Assembly (NCBI GenBank): GCA_048772705.1
Contig: JBLWGC010000145.1
Coordinates: 1 to 5,383, forward strand
From: Leidyana gryllorum EB-2025a
Lineage: Eukaryota > Protista > Apicomplexa
Length of the DNA: 5,383 bases
Direction: 5' to 3'
The notes under the pieces are model-generated. The model made no database searches. It was not told the DNA's origin and worked only from the letters and a program-made list of their open reading frames with translations. The translations under genes were made by a program, and so were the position numbers. Shown here piece after piece: positions 1-5,383 of the stretch (position 1 is the stretch's first letter; each line of letters opens with the position of its first letter).

Positions 1-67
1 AGACCGGGAATCGAACCCGGGTCTTCCGCGTGACAGGCGGAAATACTAACCACCATACTATCTCGGT
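1..67 (-). tRNA. tRNA-Asp(GTC), 3' end truncated by window edge
   Basis: Reverse complement ACCGAGATAGTATGGTGGTTAGTATTTCCGC-CTGTCAC-GCGGAAGACCCGGGTTCGATTCCCGGTCT. Near-identical to the copy at 3347-3418 but with T1>A and A14>G changes, so possibly impaired. Confidence 0.88.
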
Positions 68-162
68 GGCCCACAAACACACCGGCCTTCAACCCCAAAA
101 GTCCTCCCTCCTCGAGACTTCACGGACAGAAAACGTGTAAAGTGGCGAGCCAAGAACGCTCC

Positions 163-242
163 GGCAAGATGGCCGAGTGGTCCAAGGCGCTGTGTTCAGG
201 CCGCAGTCCGAAAGGGCGTGGGTTCGAATCCCACTCTTGTCA
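163..242 (+). tRNA. tRNA-Leu(CAG)
   Basis: 80 nt; acceptor GGCAAGA/TCTTGTC+A; anticodon arm CTGTG-TTCAGGC-CGCAG; long variable arm; T arm GTGGG-TTCGAAT-CCCAC. Confidence 0.95.
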
Positions 243-312
243 GCCGTTGTATTGTATTGGTAGGTAGTCCCCTCTCTTCACTGATAGACAGGTGGTTCGA
301 GCTACATACGGC

Positions 313-383
313 AGCACCTGCCGGGACTCGAACCCGGGTTACGACCTCGGAAGGGTCGCATCTTACCCTTAGACCACAAGTGC
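313..383 (-). tRNA. tRNA-Gly(TCC)
   Basis: Reverse complement GCACTTGTGGTCTAAGGGTAAGATG-CGACC-CTTCCGA-GGTCG-TAAC-CCGGG-TTCGAGT-CCCGG-CAGGTGC-T; 71 nt. Discriminator is T rather than the A seen in the other two Gly genes. Confidence 0.92.
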
Positions 384-533
384 AATTGCGAAAGAGTTGC
401 AGCACCCCGAGACACTCGGGCGATTTCTGCGCGCCACCATCCGCCATACACCCAAAATTGTCCACCGACTTCAGACTCATTGGCATGTGGTCAGGGATGG
501 ATTTCCAACATCTTCAACCTTCAGGTCATCTTT

Positions 534-605
534 AGGGCACGCGCGGAGTTGAACCACGGACTTGCTGATCTGCAGTCAGCTGCTCTACCACTGAGCTACG
601 TACCC
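534..605 (-). tRNA. tRNA-Cys(GCA)
   Basis: Reverse complement GGGTACGTAGCTCAGTGGTAGAGCA-GCTGA-CTGCAGA-TCAGC-AAGTC-CGTGG-TTCAACT-CCGCG-CGTGCCC-T; U73 discriminator typical of Cys. Confidence 0.95.
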
Positions 606-701
606 ACAAAACACCCGTCATACTCGCTCAACTAGATTCTGTCTTCTCGTTTGATGCAAAACGGCCGTTATTGTGCACGAGCTTGAACAACAAGGAGTCA
701 T

Positions 702-772
702 GCATCTGTGGTCTAGCGGTAGAATGTCTCGTTGCCATCGAGACGACCCGGGTTCGATTCCCGGCAGATGCA
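702..772 (+). tRNA. tRNA-Gly(GCC)
   Basis: Acceptor GCATCTG/CAGATGC+A; anticodon arm TCTCG-TTGCCAT-CGAGA; T arm CCGGG-TTCGATT-CCCGG. Confidence 0.96.
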
Positions 773-849
773 GAAGACACATGATTGTTTTCCCACCATT
801 CCAGGGATTCACGCTTGAGTTGGTGTCTGACCCCTCCAACCACATCGTA

Positions 850-878
850 CGACAACTGCTGGATTTGAACCAAGTGGG
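850..878 (-). pseudogene. 3' fragment of tRNA-Ser (acceptor 3' strand plus T arm)
   Basis: cgacaactgctggatttgaacca matches 1151-1173 cgacaactgctggattcgaacta, then similarity stops. Confidence 0.7.
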
Positions 879-941
879 CTAACGAGGTGGCCGTGTTGGT
901 TCTGGGGCAACTTGTCCCATCGGGTCAACCGACGACCAAGA

Positions 942-1008
942 GGGCTGTGTTGGGAATCGAACCAGGACTCCACCCTGAGGAGGGGTCATAGCAGTAGACC
1001 AAACAGCC
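942..1008 (-). pseudogene. tRNA-Pro pseudogene
   Basis: Alignable to Pro(CGG) 2574-2645 with deletions in the T stem and variable region and a mutated D loop; anticodon loop reads TCAGGGT; shares the flank tcgggtcaaccgac. Confidence 0.85.
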
Positions 1009-1084
1009 CATCGGTCGGTGGTGCAAATGGCTGGTGCAGTCATAATATGTCAAGAACCACTAAATGCTATGGGGTCTGCACAGC

Positions 1085-1109
1085 GGGCGACTAGCTGGAA
1101 TGATATAGC
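1085..1109 (+). pseudogene. 5' fragment of tRNA-Ala
   Basis: tctgcacagc-GGGCGACTAGCTggaatgatatagc matches the upstream flank and 5' end of Ala(AGC) at 2734; the rest is lost. Confidence 0.75.
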
Positions 1110-1150
1110 ACAGCCACGACCGAATGGAGTTGATGCCCGATCACATAACA

Positions 1151-1232
1151 CGACAACTGCTGGATTCGAACTAGCGCGGGCCAGGCCCAGTAGATTTCTA
1201 GTCTGCCCCCTTAACCACTCAGGCAAGTTGCC
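1151..1232 (-). tRNA. tRNA-Ser(AGA), with stem mismatches (possible pseudogene)
   Basis: 82 nt; acceptor GGCAACT/AGTTGTC+G73; anticodon arm GCAGA-CTAGAAA-TCTAC (one C.A); variable arm GGGCCTGGCCC; T stem GCTAG/CCAGC (one A.C). Confidence 0.88.
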
Positions 1233-1289
1233 ACCTGTCGAATTCGACATGTCGCGGAAGTGACCAAATACCCCCATGTTCAGCCTGCC

Positions 1290-1362
1290 CTGCGGCATTG
1301 ATAGATGTCTAACTGACCTCTCGCGTGCAAAGTCACCGCTCTAATACTTGAGATAGCCACCC
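1290..1362 (-). pseudogene. tRNA-Ala(TGC) pseudogene
   Basis: Reverse complement GGGTGGCTATCTCAAGTATTAGAGCGGTGACTTTGCACGCGAGAGGT aligns to the Ala genes at 2734 and 3650; T arm is destroyed; 3' boundary approximate. Confidence 0.72.
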
Positions 1363-1452
1363 GCCCGCCCGCCAAACCTAGGTGAACTTTCCATCTGAGA
1401 CCGACTCACAGTTCTCTGGCGCCTCATTCGTCAGTGCAACTGTTGTGTCTCG

Positions 1453-1526
1453 TCCACTGTAGTCTAAATGGCTAGGATATGCGGCTCTCACCCGCACGAT
1501 CCGGGTTTCAAGTCCCGGCAGCGGAA
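1453..1526 (+). tRNA. tRNA-Glu(CTC), variant (possible pseudogene)
   Basis: Anticodon arm TGCGG-CTCTCAC-CCGCA; extra T in the T loop (GGGTTTCAAG); A4.C69 acceptor mismatch. Confidence 0.85.
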
Positions 1527-1586
1527 ATCCAGCTGAGTGTGCTTGCAGGCAACAGTTCCATTCTTACATCCAGGGATATAGATCCA

Positions 1587-1659
1587 CACCGCCCGCGGGG
1601 CTCGAACCCGCGACTGCAAGATTAAGAGTCTTGCGCTCTACCGACTGAGCTAGGGCGGC
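1587..1659 (-). tRNA. tRNA-Lys(CTT)
   Basis: Reverse complement GCCGCCCTAGCTCAGTCGGTAGAGCG-CAAGA-CTCTTAA-TCTTG-CAGTC-GCGGG-TTCGAGC-CCCGC-GGGCGGT-G; fully paired. Confidence 0.96.
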
Positions 1660-1735
1660 AGGAATGCAAGGACACAAAACCCGATAGCCTGACATCTTAA
1701 GTGGCTTTGGTACCCACCAGCCTCACTTGAAGATC

Positions 1736-1807
1736 GTCCGGGTCGTCTGGTGCTTACAACAGCAAGTTGTGGCCGTGCATACCCAGGCCCGAATCCTGGC
1801 TTGGATA
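1736..1807 (+). pseudogene. tRNA-His(GTG) pseudogene
   Basis: GTCCGGG...GCAAG-TTGTGGC-CGTGC...CCAGG-CCCGAAT-CCTGG-CTTGGAT-A. Colinear with 4526-4597; D loop (A box) and T loop (B box) are mutated. Confidence 0.82.
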
Positions 1808-1929
1808 GTATGTCCACCGATGTCTCGAATGGGAGATGTAGGTGAAGCCTGTCCAAACCCACGATCGGGCGTAGCTGCCCATGTCCTCTCTGGATCGCTA
1901 CACACTTCCATTTGACGGCTCCGTTAGTC

Positions 1930-2002
1930 GGCGCTATGGCCTAATGGATATGGCATCGGTCTACGGAACCGGGGATTTTGGGTTCGAGTCCCAGTAGCGT
2001 CT
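1930..2002 (+). tRNA. tRNA-Arg(ACG)
   Basis: Acceptor GGCGCTA/TAGCGTC; A20 in D loop (AATGGATA); anticodon arm TCGGT-CTACGGA-ACCGG; T arm TTGGG-TTCGAGT-CCCAG. Confidence 0.93.
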
Positions 2003-2116
2003 GGGCGGATGGTCGGGTTGTAGCCTGTTGAGTCAACAACTCAGATCCTGTCTTAGGTGTCAGGGACATTGTCTCGGGATGGGGCGAGTGCCTTGTTGCG
2101 TCAACAACTATCAGAC

Positions 2117-2188
2117 GGGCTGTTCTGGGAGTCGAACCCAGGACTTCTTCCACCCGAAGGAAGAATCATACCACTAGACCAAACAGCC
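2117..2188 (-). tRNA. tRNA-Pro(CGG)
   Basis: Reverse complement GGCTGTTTGGTCTAGTGGTATGATT-CTTCC-TTCGGGT-GGAAG-AAGTC-CTGGG-TTCGACT-CCCAG-AACAGCC-C. Confidence 0.95.
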
Positions 2189-2280
2189 CCCTGTGGGTGC
2201 CTCAGGTACCGGCAGGTTCCAAACCTGCGGCTTCGTGGCTAAGAGACTTACCGCTTGCAGGTGCCTAGTCGATGCAGTCG

Positions 2281-2352
2281 AGCCTTCTGCCGGAATCGAA
2301 CCGGCGACCTTTCGCTTACTAAGCGAATGCTCTGCCCCTAAGCTAAGAAGGC
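2281..2352 (-). tRNA. tRNA-Thr(AGT)
   Basis: Acceptor GCCTTCT/AGAAGGC+T; anticodon arm TTCGC-TTAGTAA-GCGAA; T arm GCCGG-TTCGATT-CCGGC. Confidence 0.95.
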
Positions 2353-2420
2353 AATCCAGGCCGAAGATCAAGAATCAGTTACTATTGACGGGGATTACTG
2401 AGGCACTTTGCTCGAGTAGC

Positions 2421-2492
2421 TTCCACTGCCGGGTCTTGAACCCGGATGTACGGGTGAGAGCCGCATAACCTAGCCACTTAAACTACAGTGGA
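2421..2492 (-). tRNA. tRNA-Glu(CTC), degenerate (probable pseudogene)
   Basis: Acceptor TCCACTG/CAGTGGA is intact and the loop reads CTCTCAC; D-stem substitutions and a 1-nt variable-loop deletion relative to the other Glu copies. Confidence 0.8.
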
Positions 2493-2573
2493 CAACTTCC
2501 TCAGCTGCAGCTTTGGACGAGAGCCGTACCATCTTGAGATGAGATAGAGCGTCGGGTCAACCGACAACCAACG

Positions 2574-2645
2574 GGGCTGTTCTGGGAATCGAACCCAGGA
2601 CTTCTTCCACCCGAAGGAAGAATCATACCACTAGACCAAACAGCC
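2574..2645 (-). tRNA. tRNA-Pro(CGG), second copy
   Basis: Identical to 2117-2188 except for one T-loop base (TTCGATT). Confidence 0.95.
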
Positions 2646-2733
2646 GGCTGTCGGTCGAGCAACCCGCTGAGTACAGTCGAGAGAGTGGTCATACGATGTT
2701 GAGAACAAAAAAAATCGACGGAATCTGCACAGC

Positions 2734-2806
2734 GGGCGACTAGCTCAAATGGTAGAGCGCTCGCTTAGCATGCGAGAGGTACTGGGATCGATGCCCAAGT
2801 CGTCCA
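2734..2806 (+). tRNA. tRNA-Ala(AGC)
   Basis: G3.U70 identity pair; anticodon arm CTCGC-TTAGCAT-GCGAG; eukaryotic A54 T loop (GGATCGAT); one C.A mismatch at the base of the T stem. Confidence 0.92.
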
Positions 2807-2904
2807 AACTTCGTACGGCTTCACCTGCCGCTATTTATTTCCTGAGCTGAGATAATTGTGCCTTGTAGCCCTTGGACAGACCTGGGCATCGCAGTATGTG
2901 TGAA

Positions 2905-2977
2905 GGTTGCCTCTGAGCCCGGATTTCCGAGTTTGTATTTTACAAACACACACTCTGCCGACTAAGACACAAGAGCC
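2905..2977 (-). pseudogene. Possible highly decayed tRNA remnant (family uncertain, Asn-like)
   Basis: Reverse complement GCTCTTGTGTCTTAGTCGGCAGAGTG-TGTGT-TTGTAAA-ATACA shows a D-arm-like segment and a paired 5-bp stem with a 7-nt loop; no valid T arm. Confidence 0.35.
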
Positions 2978-3084
2978 GATTACAATATTTCAAAGGTCAG
3001 TAGAGAGACGCGTACTGCATGTGTCCAGTTGAGGAGCGCTAGTCCGGATGGCTCTACCAACTCTTTTTCGGGAAGGACTGAATC

Positions 3085-3156
3085 GGTTACGTGGTGTAGT
3101 GGTTAGCACTGGAGACTCTAAATCTCCCGACCTAGCTTCGATTCCCGGCGCGACCT
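3085..3156 (+). tRNA. tRNA-Gln body with CTA (amber) anticodon; damaged T stem, probable pseudogene
   Basis: GGTTACGTGGTGTAGTGGTTAGCACT-GGAGA-CTCTAAA-TCTCC-CGAC-CTAGC-TTCGATT-CCCGG-CGCGACC-T. Gln-type 5' half and U73; anticodon CTA at 3118-3120. Confidence 0.85.
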
Positions 3157-3219
3157 CGAAACTGGTCTTCACTTTTCCGTGAAGCCTCGCCACTTCTCGT
3201 GGTCTGCGGGACCTTCGCT

Positions 3220-3292
3220 GCAGCCATGGTCTAGTGATCACGACGCCTGCTTAACACGCAGAAGGTCCCGAGTTCGATCCTCGGTGGCTGTA
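3220..3292 (+). tRNA. tRNA-Val(AAC)
   Basis: Acceptor GCAGCCA/TGGCTGT+A; loop TTAACAC; T arm CCGAG-TTCGATC-CTCGG; the D-loop GG is changed to GA, so possibly impaired. Confidence 0.88.
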
Positions 3293-3346
3293 GCTCGCAA
3301 CTTTCAGCGGGCACCAAAATATCAATCTTAAGCGAGATCAACTGTG

Positions 3347-3418
3347 CTCCGAGACCGGGAATCGAACCCGGGTCTTCCGCGTGACAGGCGGAAATACTAA
3401 CCACTATACTATCTCGGA
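3347..3418 (-). tRNA. tRNA-Asp(GTC)
   Basis: Reverse complement TCCGAGATAGTATAGTGGTTAGTATT-TCCGC-CTGTCAC-GCGGA-AGAC-CCGGG-TTCGATT-CCCGG-TCTCGGA-G; perfect cloverleaf with G73. Confidence 0.96.
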
Positions 3419-3592
3419 CGCTCCGAACACACCGGCCTCCAATCCCAGAAGTCTTTCTATTTCGGCTCACGGACAAAAAACGCGTGGAGCGACGAACCAA
3501 CAAGACTGCGGCAAGATGGCCGAGTGGTCTAAGGCGCTGTGTTCAGGCCGCAGTCCGAAAGGGCGTGGGTTCAAATCCAACTCTTGTCAGCC
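3352..3592 (+). repeat. Direct duplication of the Asp/Leu divergent cassette (other copy 1-245)
   Basis: Both genes and the spacer align: aacacaccggcct.caa.ccca.aagtc ... tcacggaca.aaaacg.gt. Confidence 0.92.
3510..3589 (+). tRNA. tRNA-Leu(CAG), second copy
   Basis: Three differences from 163-242, including a G.A mismatch in the T stem (GTGGG/CCAAC). Confidence 0.9.
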
Positions 3593-3649
3593 ATGGTATC
3601 GGCACTCGGTCAGCCACTTGATGCGATAGGTCTTCCATGTTGTACGGAT

Positions 3650-3722
3650 GGGCGGCTAGCTCAGATGGTGCAGCGCTCGCTTTGCATGCGAGAGGTACTG
3701 GGATCGATAGCCAGGTCATCCA
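3650..3722 (+). pseudogene. tRNA-Ala(TGC), probable pseudogene
   Basis: Anticodon arm CTCGC-TTTGCAT-GCGAG is intact; mismatches at C4.A69, in the D stem (GCTC/CAGC) and at G53.G61. Confidence 0.82.
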
Positions 3723-3811
3723 AACGCCATGCAACTTTGGCTGCAGAGAAACGGCTGGCGCGTGGTCCAAAAACGTGAATGTTGGTATTTCAATCTAGTC
3801 GAAAAGCTGCC

Positions 3812-3884
3812 GCCTACGTGGCGCAATGGATAGCGCATTGGACTTCTAATCCAAAGGTTGCGAGTTCGAGTCTCGCCGTAGGTA
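3812..3884 (+). tRNA. tRNA-Arg(TCT)
   Basis: Acceptor GCCTACG/CGTAGGT+A; anticodon arm TTGGA-CTTCTAA-TCCAA; T arm GCGAG-TTCGAGT-CTCGC; no intron. Confidence 0.96.
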
Positions 3885-3948
3885 GCCAAATGCTCAGCAC
3901 TTTACTTCGATGATTTGGCTGACTAGCTGCCTTCGCTGTGGAATGTTG

Positions 3949-4019
3949 CCCACTGTAGTCTGAGTGGCTAGGATATGCGGCCTCACCCGCAAGCTCCGCG
4001 CTCAAGTCCGGCAGTGGAA
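3949..4019 (+). pseudogene. tRNA-Glu(CTC) pseudogene
   Basis: Aligns to the other Glu copies; 6-nt anticodon loop (CCTCAC, U33 lost); B box destroyed (GCGCTCAAG). Confidence 0.85.
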
Positions 4020-4107
4020 GTCAGTGGTTGAAGTCAGTTGAATACTTGAGCAAAGTGCCCAGCAATCTCCGTCAATAGTGTCTGATTCGTGATCTTCGGC
4101 TTGCATT

Positions 4108-4179
4108 GCCTTCTTAGCTTAGGGGCAGAGCGTTTGCTTCGTAATCGAGAAGTCGCCGGTTCGATTCCGGCAGAAGGCT
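4108..4179 (+). tRNA. tRNA-Thr(CGT), weak anticodon stem
   Basis: Acceptor, D and T arms are identical to Thr(AGT) 2281-2352; anticodon arm TTTGC-TTCGTAA-TCGAG has two G.U pairs and a C.U mismatch. Confidence 0.87.
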
Positions 4180-4375
4180 TGACTGCATCGACTGGGCACC
4201 TGCAAAGCTTAAGTCTCTCAAGCTCCAATCATCTTAGCCGAGCCTCGTAGTTCAGCCACCAGAGGGTAAGTCTTAGCCACAGAGTCGCAGACTGGAACCT
4301 GCCAGTACTTGAGGCACCCACTAGCTCAACGCAGACTGCGGCCGAGTCTCGGGGTGCTGGAGCTCTTTCTCGAGT

Positions 4376-4446
4376 GCACTTGTGGTCCAAGGGTAGGATG
4401 CGAGCTTCCCATGCTCGCAGCCCGGGTTCGAGTCCCGGCAGGTGCA
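4376..4446 (+). tRNA. tRNA-Gly(CCC)
   Basis: Acceptor GCACTTG/CAGGTGC+A; anticodon arm CGAGC-TTCCCAT-GCTCG; T arm CCGGG-TTCGAGT-CCCGG. Confidence 0.95.
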
Positions 4447-4525
4447 GCCGATCGTACAGACTTGACCATGGCTGCAACGATATTTCCAACATTCGGGGGC
4501 GAAGAGCAATGCACTTTAGACTGCT

Positions 4526-4597
4526 TGTCCGAGCCAGGAATCGAGCCTGGGTTTGCACGGCTACAACGTGCTGTCCTAACCACTAAACGACTCGGAC
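4526..4597 (-). tRNA. tRNA-His body carrying a GTA (Tyr) anticodon
   Basis: Reverse complement GTCCGAG-TC-GTTTAGTGGTTAGGAC-A-GCACG-TTGTAGC-CGTGC-AAAC-CCAGG-CTCGATT-CCTGG-CTCGGAC-A. Homologous to the His(GTG) copy at 1736; carries T54>C. Confidence 0.88.
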
Positions 4598-4693
4598 AAT
4601 CTTTGAGCGAGACTGTAGAGGTAGCGAAGCATCGATCAGGATGGAACAGGAGCGTCAGACAAACTACGTTGTAAGAAGTCCACTCCTCAACTC

Positions 4694-4773
4694 CCCGGTG
4701 GGACGGAATTTGCTCGTCGAATATCTGATGCCACCACTACCATCAGATGCGTTGCCATCTAAGCAACTAGGGC
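4694..4773 (-). pseudogene. Intron-containing tRNA-Tyr(GTA) pseudogene
   Basis: Reverse complement ...GCATCTGA-TG-GTA-G-tggtggc-ATCAGATATTCGACGAGCAAATTCCGTCCCACCGG. Inverted paralogue of 4937-5016 with decayed D and T arms. Confidence 0.78.
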
Positions 4774-4936
4774 GGTTAGAGTACTTCGGGGCGGTACACC
4801 GCAGGTCGTGCAATCTTACCGGAACTCGAGTCTGGCACCTTCGAGCACCCCGAAATCCGTGCCGTACTTCTGAGCTTGAGAGCCCCACTGTTGAGGGTCT
4901 GAGGTTGAGCCTTCGAACCTCGCAGCAGTTGGACGG

Positions 4937-5016
4937 CCGGGGGTAGCTCAGTTGGTAGAGCATCTGACTGTGGTGCTGGCATCAGGTAGTCGGCGGTTCG
5001 ATTCCGTCCCACCGGA
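4937..5016 (+). tRNA. tRNA-Tyr body with 7-nt intron (4974-4980) carrying a GTG (His) anticodon
   Basis: C1-G72 and A73; CCGGGGGTAGCTCAGTTGGTAGAGCA-TCTGA-CT-GTG-G-[tgctggc]-A-TCAGG-TAGTC-GGCGG-TTCGATT-CCGTC-CCACCGG-A; G5.A68 mismatch. Confidence 0.88.
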
Positions 5017-5117
5017 AGTAGAGTGGTGGTTGGCAGACTGCTACTCAACCTGATGGGTTTTGGCAGACATCGTTGATGGGCCAATTGGAATGAATCTGGC
5101 GAAGAGTCCATGCATAT

Positions 5118-5268
5118 ACAACTCAAATCTTGTCTTAGCTGTCGCAGCAGCATATCTTAGACAACCTTGAAGAGACGTGGCGTATTAAGTCAACAACTGA
5201 CAGACGGGCTGTTCTGGGAATCAAACCCAGCACTCCTTCCACCCAAGGAATGATCATTCACCAGACCA
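5118..5268 (+). repeat. Direct duplication of Pro gene plus downstream flank (other copy ~2037-2181)
   Basis: caactca.atc.tgtcttag.tgtc and gtcaacaact..cagacgggctgttctggga are shared. Confidence 0.8.
5206..5268 (-). pseudogene. tRNA-Pro pseudogene, 5' end lost
   Basis: Aligns to 2117-2181 with an anticodon deletion (cacccaagg versus cacccgaagg) and several substitutions; shares the flank tcaacaact..cagac. Confidence 0.85.
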
Positions 5269-5320
5269 CGTCTTGTCAAGAGGGTACAGCTCTTGGCTAA
5301 AGCTGCAGCTGAGGGAGTTG

Positions 5321-5383
5321 TCCACTGTAGTCTAAGTGGCTAGGATATGCGGCTTTCACCCGCACGATCCGGGTTCAAGTCCC
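5321..5383 (+). tRNA. tRNA-Glu(TTC), truncated by window edge
   Basis: TCCACTGTAGTCTAAGTGGCTAGGATA-TGCGG-CTTTCAC-CCGCA-CGAT-CCGGGTTCAAGTCCC. Confidence 0.92.

What the first reader, a model, noticed from the sequence alone, without database searches (positions are those of the whole stretch)
4526..5016. Reciprocal His/Tyr anticodon swap: His-body tRNA with GTA next to a Tyr-body tRNA with GTG
Seen: 4526-4597(-) has a His body (its decayed paralogue at 1736 keeps TTGTGGC) but reads TTGTAGC, anticodon GTA. About 340 bp away, 4937-5016(+) has a Tyr body (C1-G72, A73, 37/38 intron; its decayed paralogue at 4694 keeps GTA) but reads GTG. In each family the best-preserved copy in this window carries the other's anticodon. 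Known: eukaryotic TyrRS relies largely on C1-G72, A73 and G34, so a Tyr-body tRNA(GTG) could insert Tyr at CAY codons. Thg1 uses the GUG anticodon to add the His determinant G-1, so the GTA His-body tRNA could lose His identity. Inference: this is either a mistranslation or identity-switch pair, or two independent transitions in decaying copies. Each gene has one other lesion (T54C; G5.A68), so coincidence is quite plausible.
Basis: partly seen in the sequence, partly recalled or inferred. Interest (0 to 1): 0.85.

Follow-up and report, generated by a model that had tools for sequence, protein, structure and literature searches.

The report
Two mutated tRNA copies, coincidental swap
Two neighbouring tRNA genes in a crowded, fast-decaying eukaryotic tRNA cluster each carry a single anticodon change that gives them each other's anticodon; this is most likely ordinary decay of spare copies, not a designed histidine/tyrosine exchange.

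Summary
With anticodons masked, 4526-4597(-) scores His 53.6 vs Tyr 2.1 bits yet reads GTA; 4937-5016(+) scores Tyr 61.7 yet reads GTG. The lesion list needs correcting: C54 is shared with the His paralogue, so it is a family trait. The private changes are C12T in the His body, and A43G plus probably T5G in the Tyr body. Neither body gained the other's acceptor-stem identity, and nothing beside position 36 was co-converted. Three anticodon changes in 24 near-intact copies fit the body mutation rate (P=0.19). A reciprocal pair arises in about 1-4% of such windows, and unchecked scan notes describe many such arrays in this genome, with canonical Tyr and His copies and other mismatches (Gly/Asp, Asn/Lys). 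The scan also noted a His/Tyr swap on another piece of this genome (s1-576660), possibly a copy of this block; I could not read it. Predicted outcome is asymmetric: His-body GTA is uncharged; Tyr-body GTG, if expressed, could take Tyr or His. Verdict: ordinary isotype-mismatch copies; low interest.

The parts
4526..4597 (-). tRNA-His-type gene with anticodon GTA (G36A at 4562); private C12T at 4586; family-wide C54 at 4545; G1-C72, A73, no encoded G-1
4937..5016 (+). tRNA-Tyr-type gene with anticodon GTG (A36G at 4972); G5.A68 mismatch (4941); A43G (4986); keeps C1-G72, A73, G34, T35
4974..4980 (+). 7-nt intron at 37/38 of the Tyr-type gene; same length in the decayed paralogue; 9 nt in L061, mostly 11-14 nt in other relatives
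1736..1807 (+). decayed tRNA-His paralogue, anticodon GTG, C54; 8 private changes; upstream 40 nt related to that of the 4526 gene (62%, p=0.003)
4694..4772 (-). heavily decayed tRNA-Tyr paralogue between the two variant genes, anticodon GTA, 7-nt intron, 15 private changes
   Evidence: (I4)
3085..3156 (+). Gln-type gene with anticodon CTA, the third non-synonymous position-36 change in the window; 6 differences from relatives' consensus, including broken pairs
1..5383 (.). context: dense mixed-isotype, two-strand eukaryotic tRNA array, about 32 recognisable copies from intact to badly decayed; longest ORF 125 aa, none searched

Best explanation
The two genes are redundant copies in a tRNA array that turns over by duplication and decay. 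Each was an ordinary His or Tyr gene until recently. Each then took a few independent point mutations, mostly transitions, one of which hit position 36. His (GTG) and Tyr (GTA) differ by one transition at 36, so a transition there necessarily gives the other's anticodon, and two such hits close together look like a swap. Shown: ancestry of the bodies, the private changes, no co-conversion, rates compatible with chance. Inferred from model-organism rules: the His-body GTA transcript loses Thg1 and HisRS recognition, has G1-C72 and so is not a TyrRS substrate, and is effectively dead. The Tyr-body GTG transcript, if made and spliced, keeps all listed eukaryotic Tyr determinants and gains the Thg1 signal, so it could be charged with Tyr or His; it is weakened by G5.A68 and T27.G43 and diluted by canonical copies elsewhere.
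For: Body assignment is unambiguous. Both genes carry extra private, stem-weakening changes: C12T; A43G and G5.A68. The window holds a continuum of decay with 70 transitions to 46 transversions. At the body rate (0.029 per conserved site) 1.5 non-synonymous anticodon changes are expected in 24 near-intact copies; 3 are seen, P=0.19. Given 3 such changes, a reciprocal pair occurs in 3-4% of windows, or 47-59% chance of at least one in 20 windows. Positions 32 and 38 were not exchanged, so any conversion tract would be 5 nt or less with one informative site. Related arrays are canonical: 44/44 distinct Tyr genes GTA, 12/12 His genes GTG, with scattered body/anticodon conflicts in 7 of 468 tRNAs. 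Such mismatches are pervasive standing variation in Caenorhabditis (PMC13010820) and scale with tRNA gene number (PMC3923123). Unchecked scan notes list canonical Tyr(GTA) and His copies and other mismatches on other pieces.
Against: Both genes are nearly intact (2 and 3 private changes) and are the best copies of their families in this window. Per window the coincidence is uncommon: 1-4%, and about 0.1% for His/Tyr specifically. All three changes fall at position 36 (P about 0.09). An unchecked note reports a His/Tyr swap on another piece (s1-576660). The number of array windows in the genome is not known exactly, and no close relative or raw read was examined.
Confidence: 0.8

Rival explanations
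1. The Tyr-body GTG gene is an expressed, one-way variant with real effect: either a low-level mistranslator putting Tyr at CAY codons, or a tRNA being re-identified as His through Thg1 G-1 addition. The His-body GTA gene beside it is incidental.
For: It keeps A73, C1-G72, G34 and U35, the listed eukaryotic Tyr determinants; A36 is not among them and makes few base-specific contacts in yeast TyrRS. GUG plus A73 are the Thg1 signals. A and B boxes look intact and a T4 run lies 42 nt downstream.
Against: Acceptor mismatch G5.A68 and T27.G43. No RNA run holds this DNA, so expression is untested. Notes report many canonical Tyr copies elsewhere. The G at -1 (4936) is uninformative: 16 of 44 relatives have it.
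Confidence: 0.1
2. One or both anticodon bases are consensus errors of a collapsed or low-coverage assembly of a repetitive array.
Against: Divergence is very uneven: copies with no private change lie next to copies with up to 15, unlike uniform read error. A similar pair is noted on another piece (s1-576660, unchecked).
Confidence: 0.06
3. The pair is a selected or mechanistically coupled reciprocal switch: produced by exchange between the two anticodon loops, or kept as a balanced His/Tyr ambiguity module.
For: Proximity (339 bp), both genes near-intact, a second noted His/Tyr swap, and other reciprocal mismatches noted in the genome (Gly/Asp, Asn/Lys, unchecked).
Against: Shared sequence around the site is 5 nt with no co-converted marker. 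The His body has not acquired C1-G72 or the intron, so it cannot act as Tyr. Neither variant occurs in 120 related loci. Reciprocal pairs are the expected by-product of transition bias.
Confidence: 0.04

Closest known systems
Isotype-switch (anticodon/backbone mismatch) tRNA alleles of Caenorhabditis (PMC13010820)
   Same: Single-base anticodon changes in otherwise normal bodies within large redundant tRNA repertoires; mostly rare and recent, attributed to mutation load.
   Different: There population frequencies are known; here there is one assembly, a much denser array with many decayed copies, and two mismatches that happen to be reciprocal and adjacent.
Alloacceptor anticodon shifts in eukaryotic genomes (Rogers and Griffiths-Jones, PMC3923123)
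   Same: Single-base change at 35 or 36 between identities; more frequent where tRNA genes are redundant.
   Different: Those were defined with syntenic orthologues in related genomes and structure filters; no orthologous slot or covarying body change is available here.
Natural mistranslating tRNA variants such as human tRNA-Ser-AGA G35A (PMC12993449, abstract seen)
   Same: An anticodon variant in a body whose synthetase relies largely on other determinants; the Tyr-body GTG gene could work this way.
   Different: Those are shown to be expressed and to mistranslate; SerRS ignores the anticodon, whereas here Thg1 and HisRS compete for a GUG tRNA, and expression is unknown.
Mixed-isotype tRNA gene islands of algae and protists (PMC13578239; loci L061, L036, L041)
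   Same: Many isotypes on both strands at high density.
   Different: L061 has 43 tRNAs in 6.8 kb with no body/anticodon conflict; this window has many decayed and mismatched copies.

Membership tests
Eukaryotic cytosolic tRNA-His (gene 4526-4597) | His-type body sequence | tested here: met
   His profile 53.6 bits vs next 10.5, anticodon masked; 85% identical to L061 His
Eukaryotic cytosolic tRNA-His (gene 4526-4597) | GUG anticodon, needed by Thg1 and by G-1-independent HisRS | tested here: not met
   GTA; requirement from PMC3245924 and PMC4338351
Eukaryotic cytosolic tRNA-His (gene 4526-4597) | G-1 on the mature RNA | not testable with these tools
   not encoded: base -1 is T; no RNA data
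Eukaryotic cytosolic tRNA-Tyr (gene 4526-4597, as a switched tRNA) | C1-G72 with A73 | tested here: not met
   G1-C72
Eukaryotic cytosolic tRNA-Tyr (gene 4937-5016) | C1-G72, A73, G34, U35 | tested here: met
   determinant list from PMC9976931 Table 1
Eukaryotic cytosolic tRNA-Tyr (gene 4937-5016) | 37/38 intron and Tyr-type body | tested here: met
   7-nt intron 4974-4980; Tyr profile 61.7 vs next 34.0 bits
Eukaryotic cytosolic tRNA-Tyr (gene 4937-5016) | GUA anticodon | tested here: not met
   GTG; 44/44 distinct relatives GTA
Isotype-mismatch tRNA gene copy | body predicts one amino acid, anticodon another | tested here: met
   both genes
Fixed alloacceptor shift (tRNA remolding) | variant conserved at an orthologous locus in relatives | tested here: inconclusive
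Fixed alloacceptor shift (tRNA remolding) | body changes towards the new identity | tested here: not met
   private changes only weaken stems; no new determinant gained
Mistranslating tRNA variant | expressed, charged with the original amino acid, misincorporation detected | not testable with these tools
   no RNA run listed

The most novel reading that the evidence does not exclude
The Tyr-body GTG gene is expressed and is a natural dual-identity tRNA, charged with Tyr by TyrRS or with His after Thg1 adds G-1, and the His/Tyr pair is kept in more than one place in the genome as a source of controlled His/Tyr ambiguity.
Probability: 0.06. Interest if true: 0.6.

Novelty: new member of a known kind. 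Interest (0 to 1): 0.18.

Why it matters
As it stands it matters little: body/anticodon mismatches are a known by-product of large, fast-turnover tRNA repertoires. Its use is cautionary: annotation by anticodon alone (ARAGORN) miscalls both genes, so tRNA counts in this genome need isotype-specific models. If the Tyr-body GTG tRNA were expressed, it would be a natural test of whether Thg1 anticodon recognition rescues or worsens an anticodon mutation, since TyrRS and Thg1/HisRS would compete for one tRNA.

Tried and rejected
So bases 4562 and 4972 are unchecked in reads. The run search found only small shares (5-9% of words; air, phyllosphere, moss and bat-gut metagenomes, three coded organisms) and no RNA run. 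An exact His pattern found nothing in metagenome contigs or viral contigs. The findings look-up by sequence was blank, which means nothing here. Lineage was not identified: literature searches on C54, tRNA islands and 7-nt introns gave no match. Rejected: T54C as a lesion (shared with the paralogue); gene conversion between the loops (no co-converted base); encoded G at -1 of the Tyr-body gene as an adaptation (common in relatives); free-energy folding as a test (the canonical L061 His also misfolds). The first simulation timed out and was rerun. tRNAscan-SE was not available; masked-anticodon HMMs from relatives were used instead.

Full report
Setting. The window is a dense eukaryotic tRNA array. 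ARAGORN genes, Rfam 25 tRNA matches, and a sensitive scan about 32 recognisable copies (plus the Arg-TCT gene). The longest ORF is 125 aa; none was searched. Blocks of tRNA plus flank are duplicated in direct and inverted orientation. In paralogous pairs the bodies are usually more alike than the flanks, for example Leu 96% vs 63-72%. Copies range from no private change to 15. This is birth-and-death turnover. The organism was not identified. The closest locus found, L061 (JGI metagenome contig, 43 tRNAs in 6.8 kb), is a similar array.

The observation. 4526-4597(-) folds as a cloverleaf with anticodon GTA, and 4937-5016(+) with GTG and a 7-nt intron. With the anticodon masked, profiles built from relatives' tRNAs score the first His 53.6 bits (next 10.5; Tyr 2.1) and the second Tyr 61.7 (next 34.0; no His hit). 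The decayed paralogues at 1736 and 4694 keep GTG and GTA. All 44 distinct Tyr genes and 12 distinct His genes in 120 related loci are canonical. So both changes are derived transitions at position 36 (4562 and 4972).

Correcting the lesion list. C54 is shared by both His copies in the window, and unchecked notes report it in His copies on other pieces. It is a family trait. The His body's private second change is C12T, which leaves two G.U pairs in the D-stem. The Tyr body has A43G (T27-A43 in 44/44 relatives and in the paralogue) and the G5.A68 mismatch (T5-A68 in L082; direction inferred). Both genes are at an early stage of decay, and neither has gained any determinant of the other amino acid.

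Is it more than chance? Private changes at conserved body positions run at 0.029 per site in near-intact copies. That predicts 1.5 non-synonymous anticodon changes among 24 copies; 3 are seen (Gln-CTA, His-GTA, Tyr-GTG), P=0.19. Transitions make up 70 of 116 substitutions (single-copy families inflate these counts with lineage traits). Given three changes, some reciprocal pair appears in 3-4% of windows; unconditionally 1-4%. Conditional on three changes per window, the chance of at least one pair in 20 windows is 47-59%; at the lower body-rate expectation it is 0.2 pairs per 20 windows. The specific His/Tyr pair is rarer (about 0.1%), but it was picked after the fact. The scan lists at least eight array windows in this genome out of 65 read so far (only eight are shown per look-up). 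Its notes include other mismatches: Gly body with GTC, Asp body with GCC, an Asn/Lys reciprocal pair, Arg body with TCA, a further Gln-CUA. These notes are unchecked. Relatives' arrays show conflicts in 7 of 468 distinct tRNAs. A coincidence is therefore plausible, though this window alone does not prove it.

Mechanism of origin. Exchange between the two anticodon loops is unlikely. Positions 32 and 38 were not exchanged, so a tract would be at most 5 nt with one informative site. Two point mutations are simpler. One loose end: note s1-576660 reports a reciprocal His/Tyr swap over 495 letters on another piece, against 491 here. The similar span suggests a duplicate or allelic copy of this block. 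That would argue against a read error without implying a second origin. I could not read that piece.

What the RNAs would do (inferred from model organisms). Eukaryotic Tyr identity is A73, C1-G72, G34, U35, and His identity is G-1, A73, G34, U35 (PMC9976931). In yeast TyrRS the strongest determinants are C1-G72 and A73, A36 makes few base-specific contacts, and G1-C72 explains lack of cross-reaction (PMC1934993). Thg1 needs the GUG anticodon and A73, and GUG placed in tRNA-Phe promotes G-1 addition (PMC3245924; PMC6471195). G-1-independent HisRS enzymes also depend on GUG (PMC4338351). The His-body GTA gene has no encoded G-1, has lost GUG and has G1-C72, so it should be charged by neither enzyme. 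The Tyr-body GTG gene keeps every listed Tyr determinant and gains the Thg1 signal, so it could carry Tyr (misreading CAY) or His (harmless). The swap is symmetric in sequence but not in predicted function. Whether either gene is transcribed is unknown; no RNA run holds this DNA.

Comparison with what is known. Backbone/anticodon mismatches are pervasive in Caenorhabditis, with 19-31 switched genes per species and many rare recent alleles ascribed to mutation load (PMC13010820). Alloacceptor shifts correlate with tRNA gene number (r=0.88; PMC3923123). These two genes meet the definition of isotype-mismatch copies. They do not meet that of a fixed identity shift: no covarying change, no conservation shown.

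Limits. Assembly error is therefore not excluded directly.

Verdict. Real in sequence, most likely two independent transitions in redundant, slightly damaged copies (0.8). Interest 0.18; new member of a known kind. The most novel reading still open is an expressed dual-identity Tyr-body GUG tRNA (0.06).

Noticed in passing
window 3085-3156 (+): Gln-type body (50.7 bits, anticodon masked) with CTA anticodon and several broken pairs; looks like a decaying copy rather than a working amber suppressor. A note reports a Gln-CUA on another piece.
   Followed up: partly
window 4545 and the 1736-1807 copy: tRNA-His of this genome carries C54 in the T-loop; all 12 distinct His genes of related loci, including L061, have T54.
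   Followed up: partly
window 4974-4980; L061; L082: Very short tRNA-Tyr introns: 7 nt here, 9 nt in L061, 5 nt in L082, against 11-14 nt in most related loci. Whether a 5-7 nt intron is spliced efficiently is untested.
   Followed up: partly
window 163-242 and 3510-3589: Both Leu-CAG copies are closer to L061 Leu-AAG (94-95%) than to L061 Leu-CAG (89-90%), suggesting isoacceptors arise by wobble-base change in place; Thr AGT/CGT, Ala AGC/TGC, Glu CTC/TTC and Pro CGG/AGG paralogues suggest the same.
   Followed up: no
downstream of 4526, 2281, 1587 (all minus strand): No T run of 4 or more within 80 nt downstream of several near-intact genes; Pol III termination in this array may be atypical.
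   Followed up: no
L041, L036, L078, L091, L044 (metagenome contigs): Compact RNA-gene islands: a near-complete tRNA set clustered with 5S rRNA and, depending on the locus, U1, U2, U4, U5, U6 and SRP RNA within 9-14 kb; L041 has all of these plus tRNA-Sec. The eukaryote is unidentified.
   Followed up: no
L009, L037, L044, L060, L072, L107: Seven body/anticodon conflicts in relatives' tRNA arrays (for example Asn body with GCT or GAT, Thr body with TGA), a background of about 1.5%.
   Followed up: partly
L082 1547-3665 (-): Exon-like pieces that look like a CCT/TCP-1 chaperonin subunit gene next to the tRNA-Tyr most similar to the window's; could help place the lineage. Recognised by eye, not searched.
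   Followed up: no
window 2193-2221 and 4293-4321: A 29-nt inverted repeat (93%) outside any called tRNA, next to the duplicated Thr genes; conserved better than the surrounding spacer.
   Followed up: no
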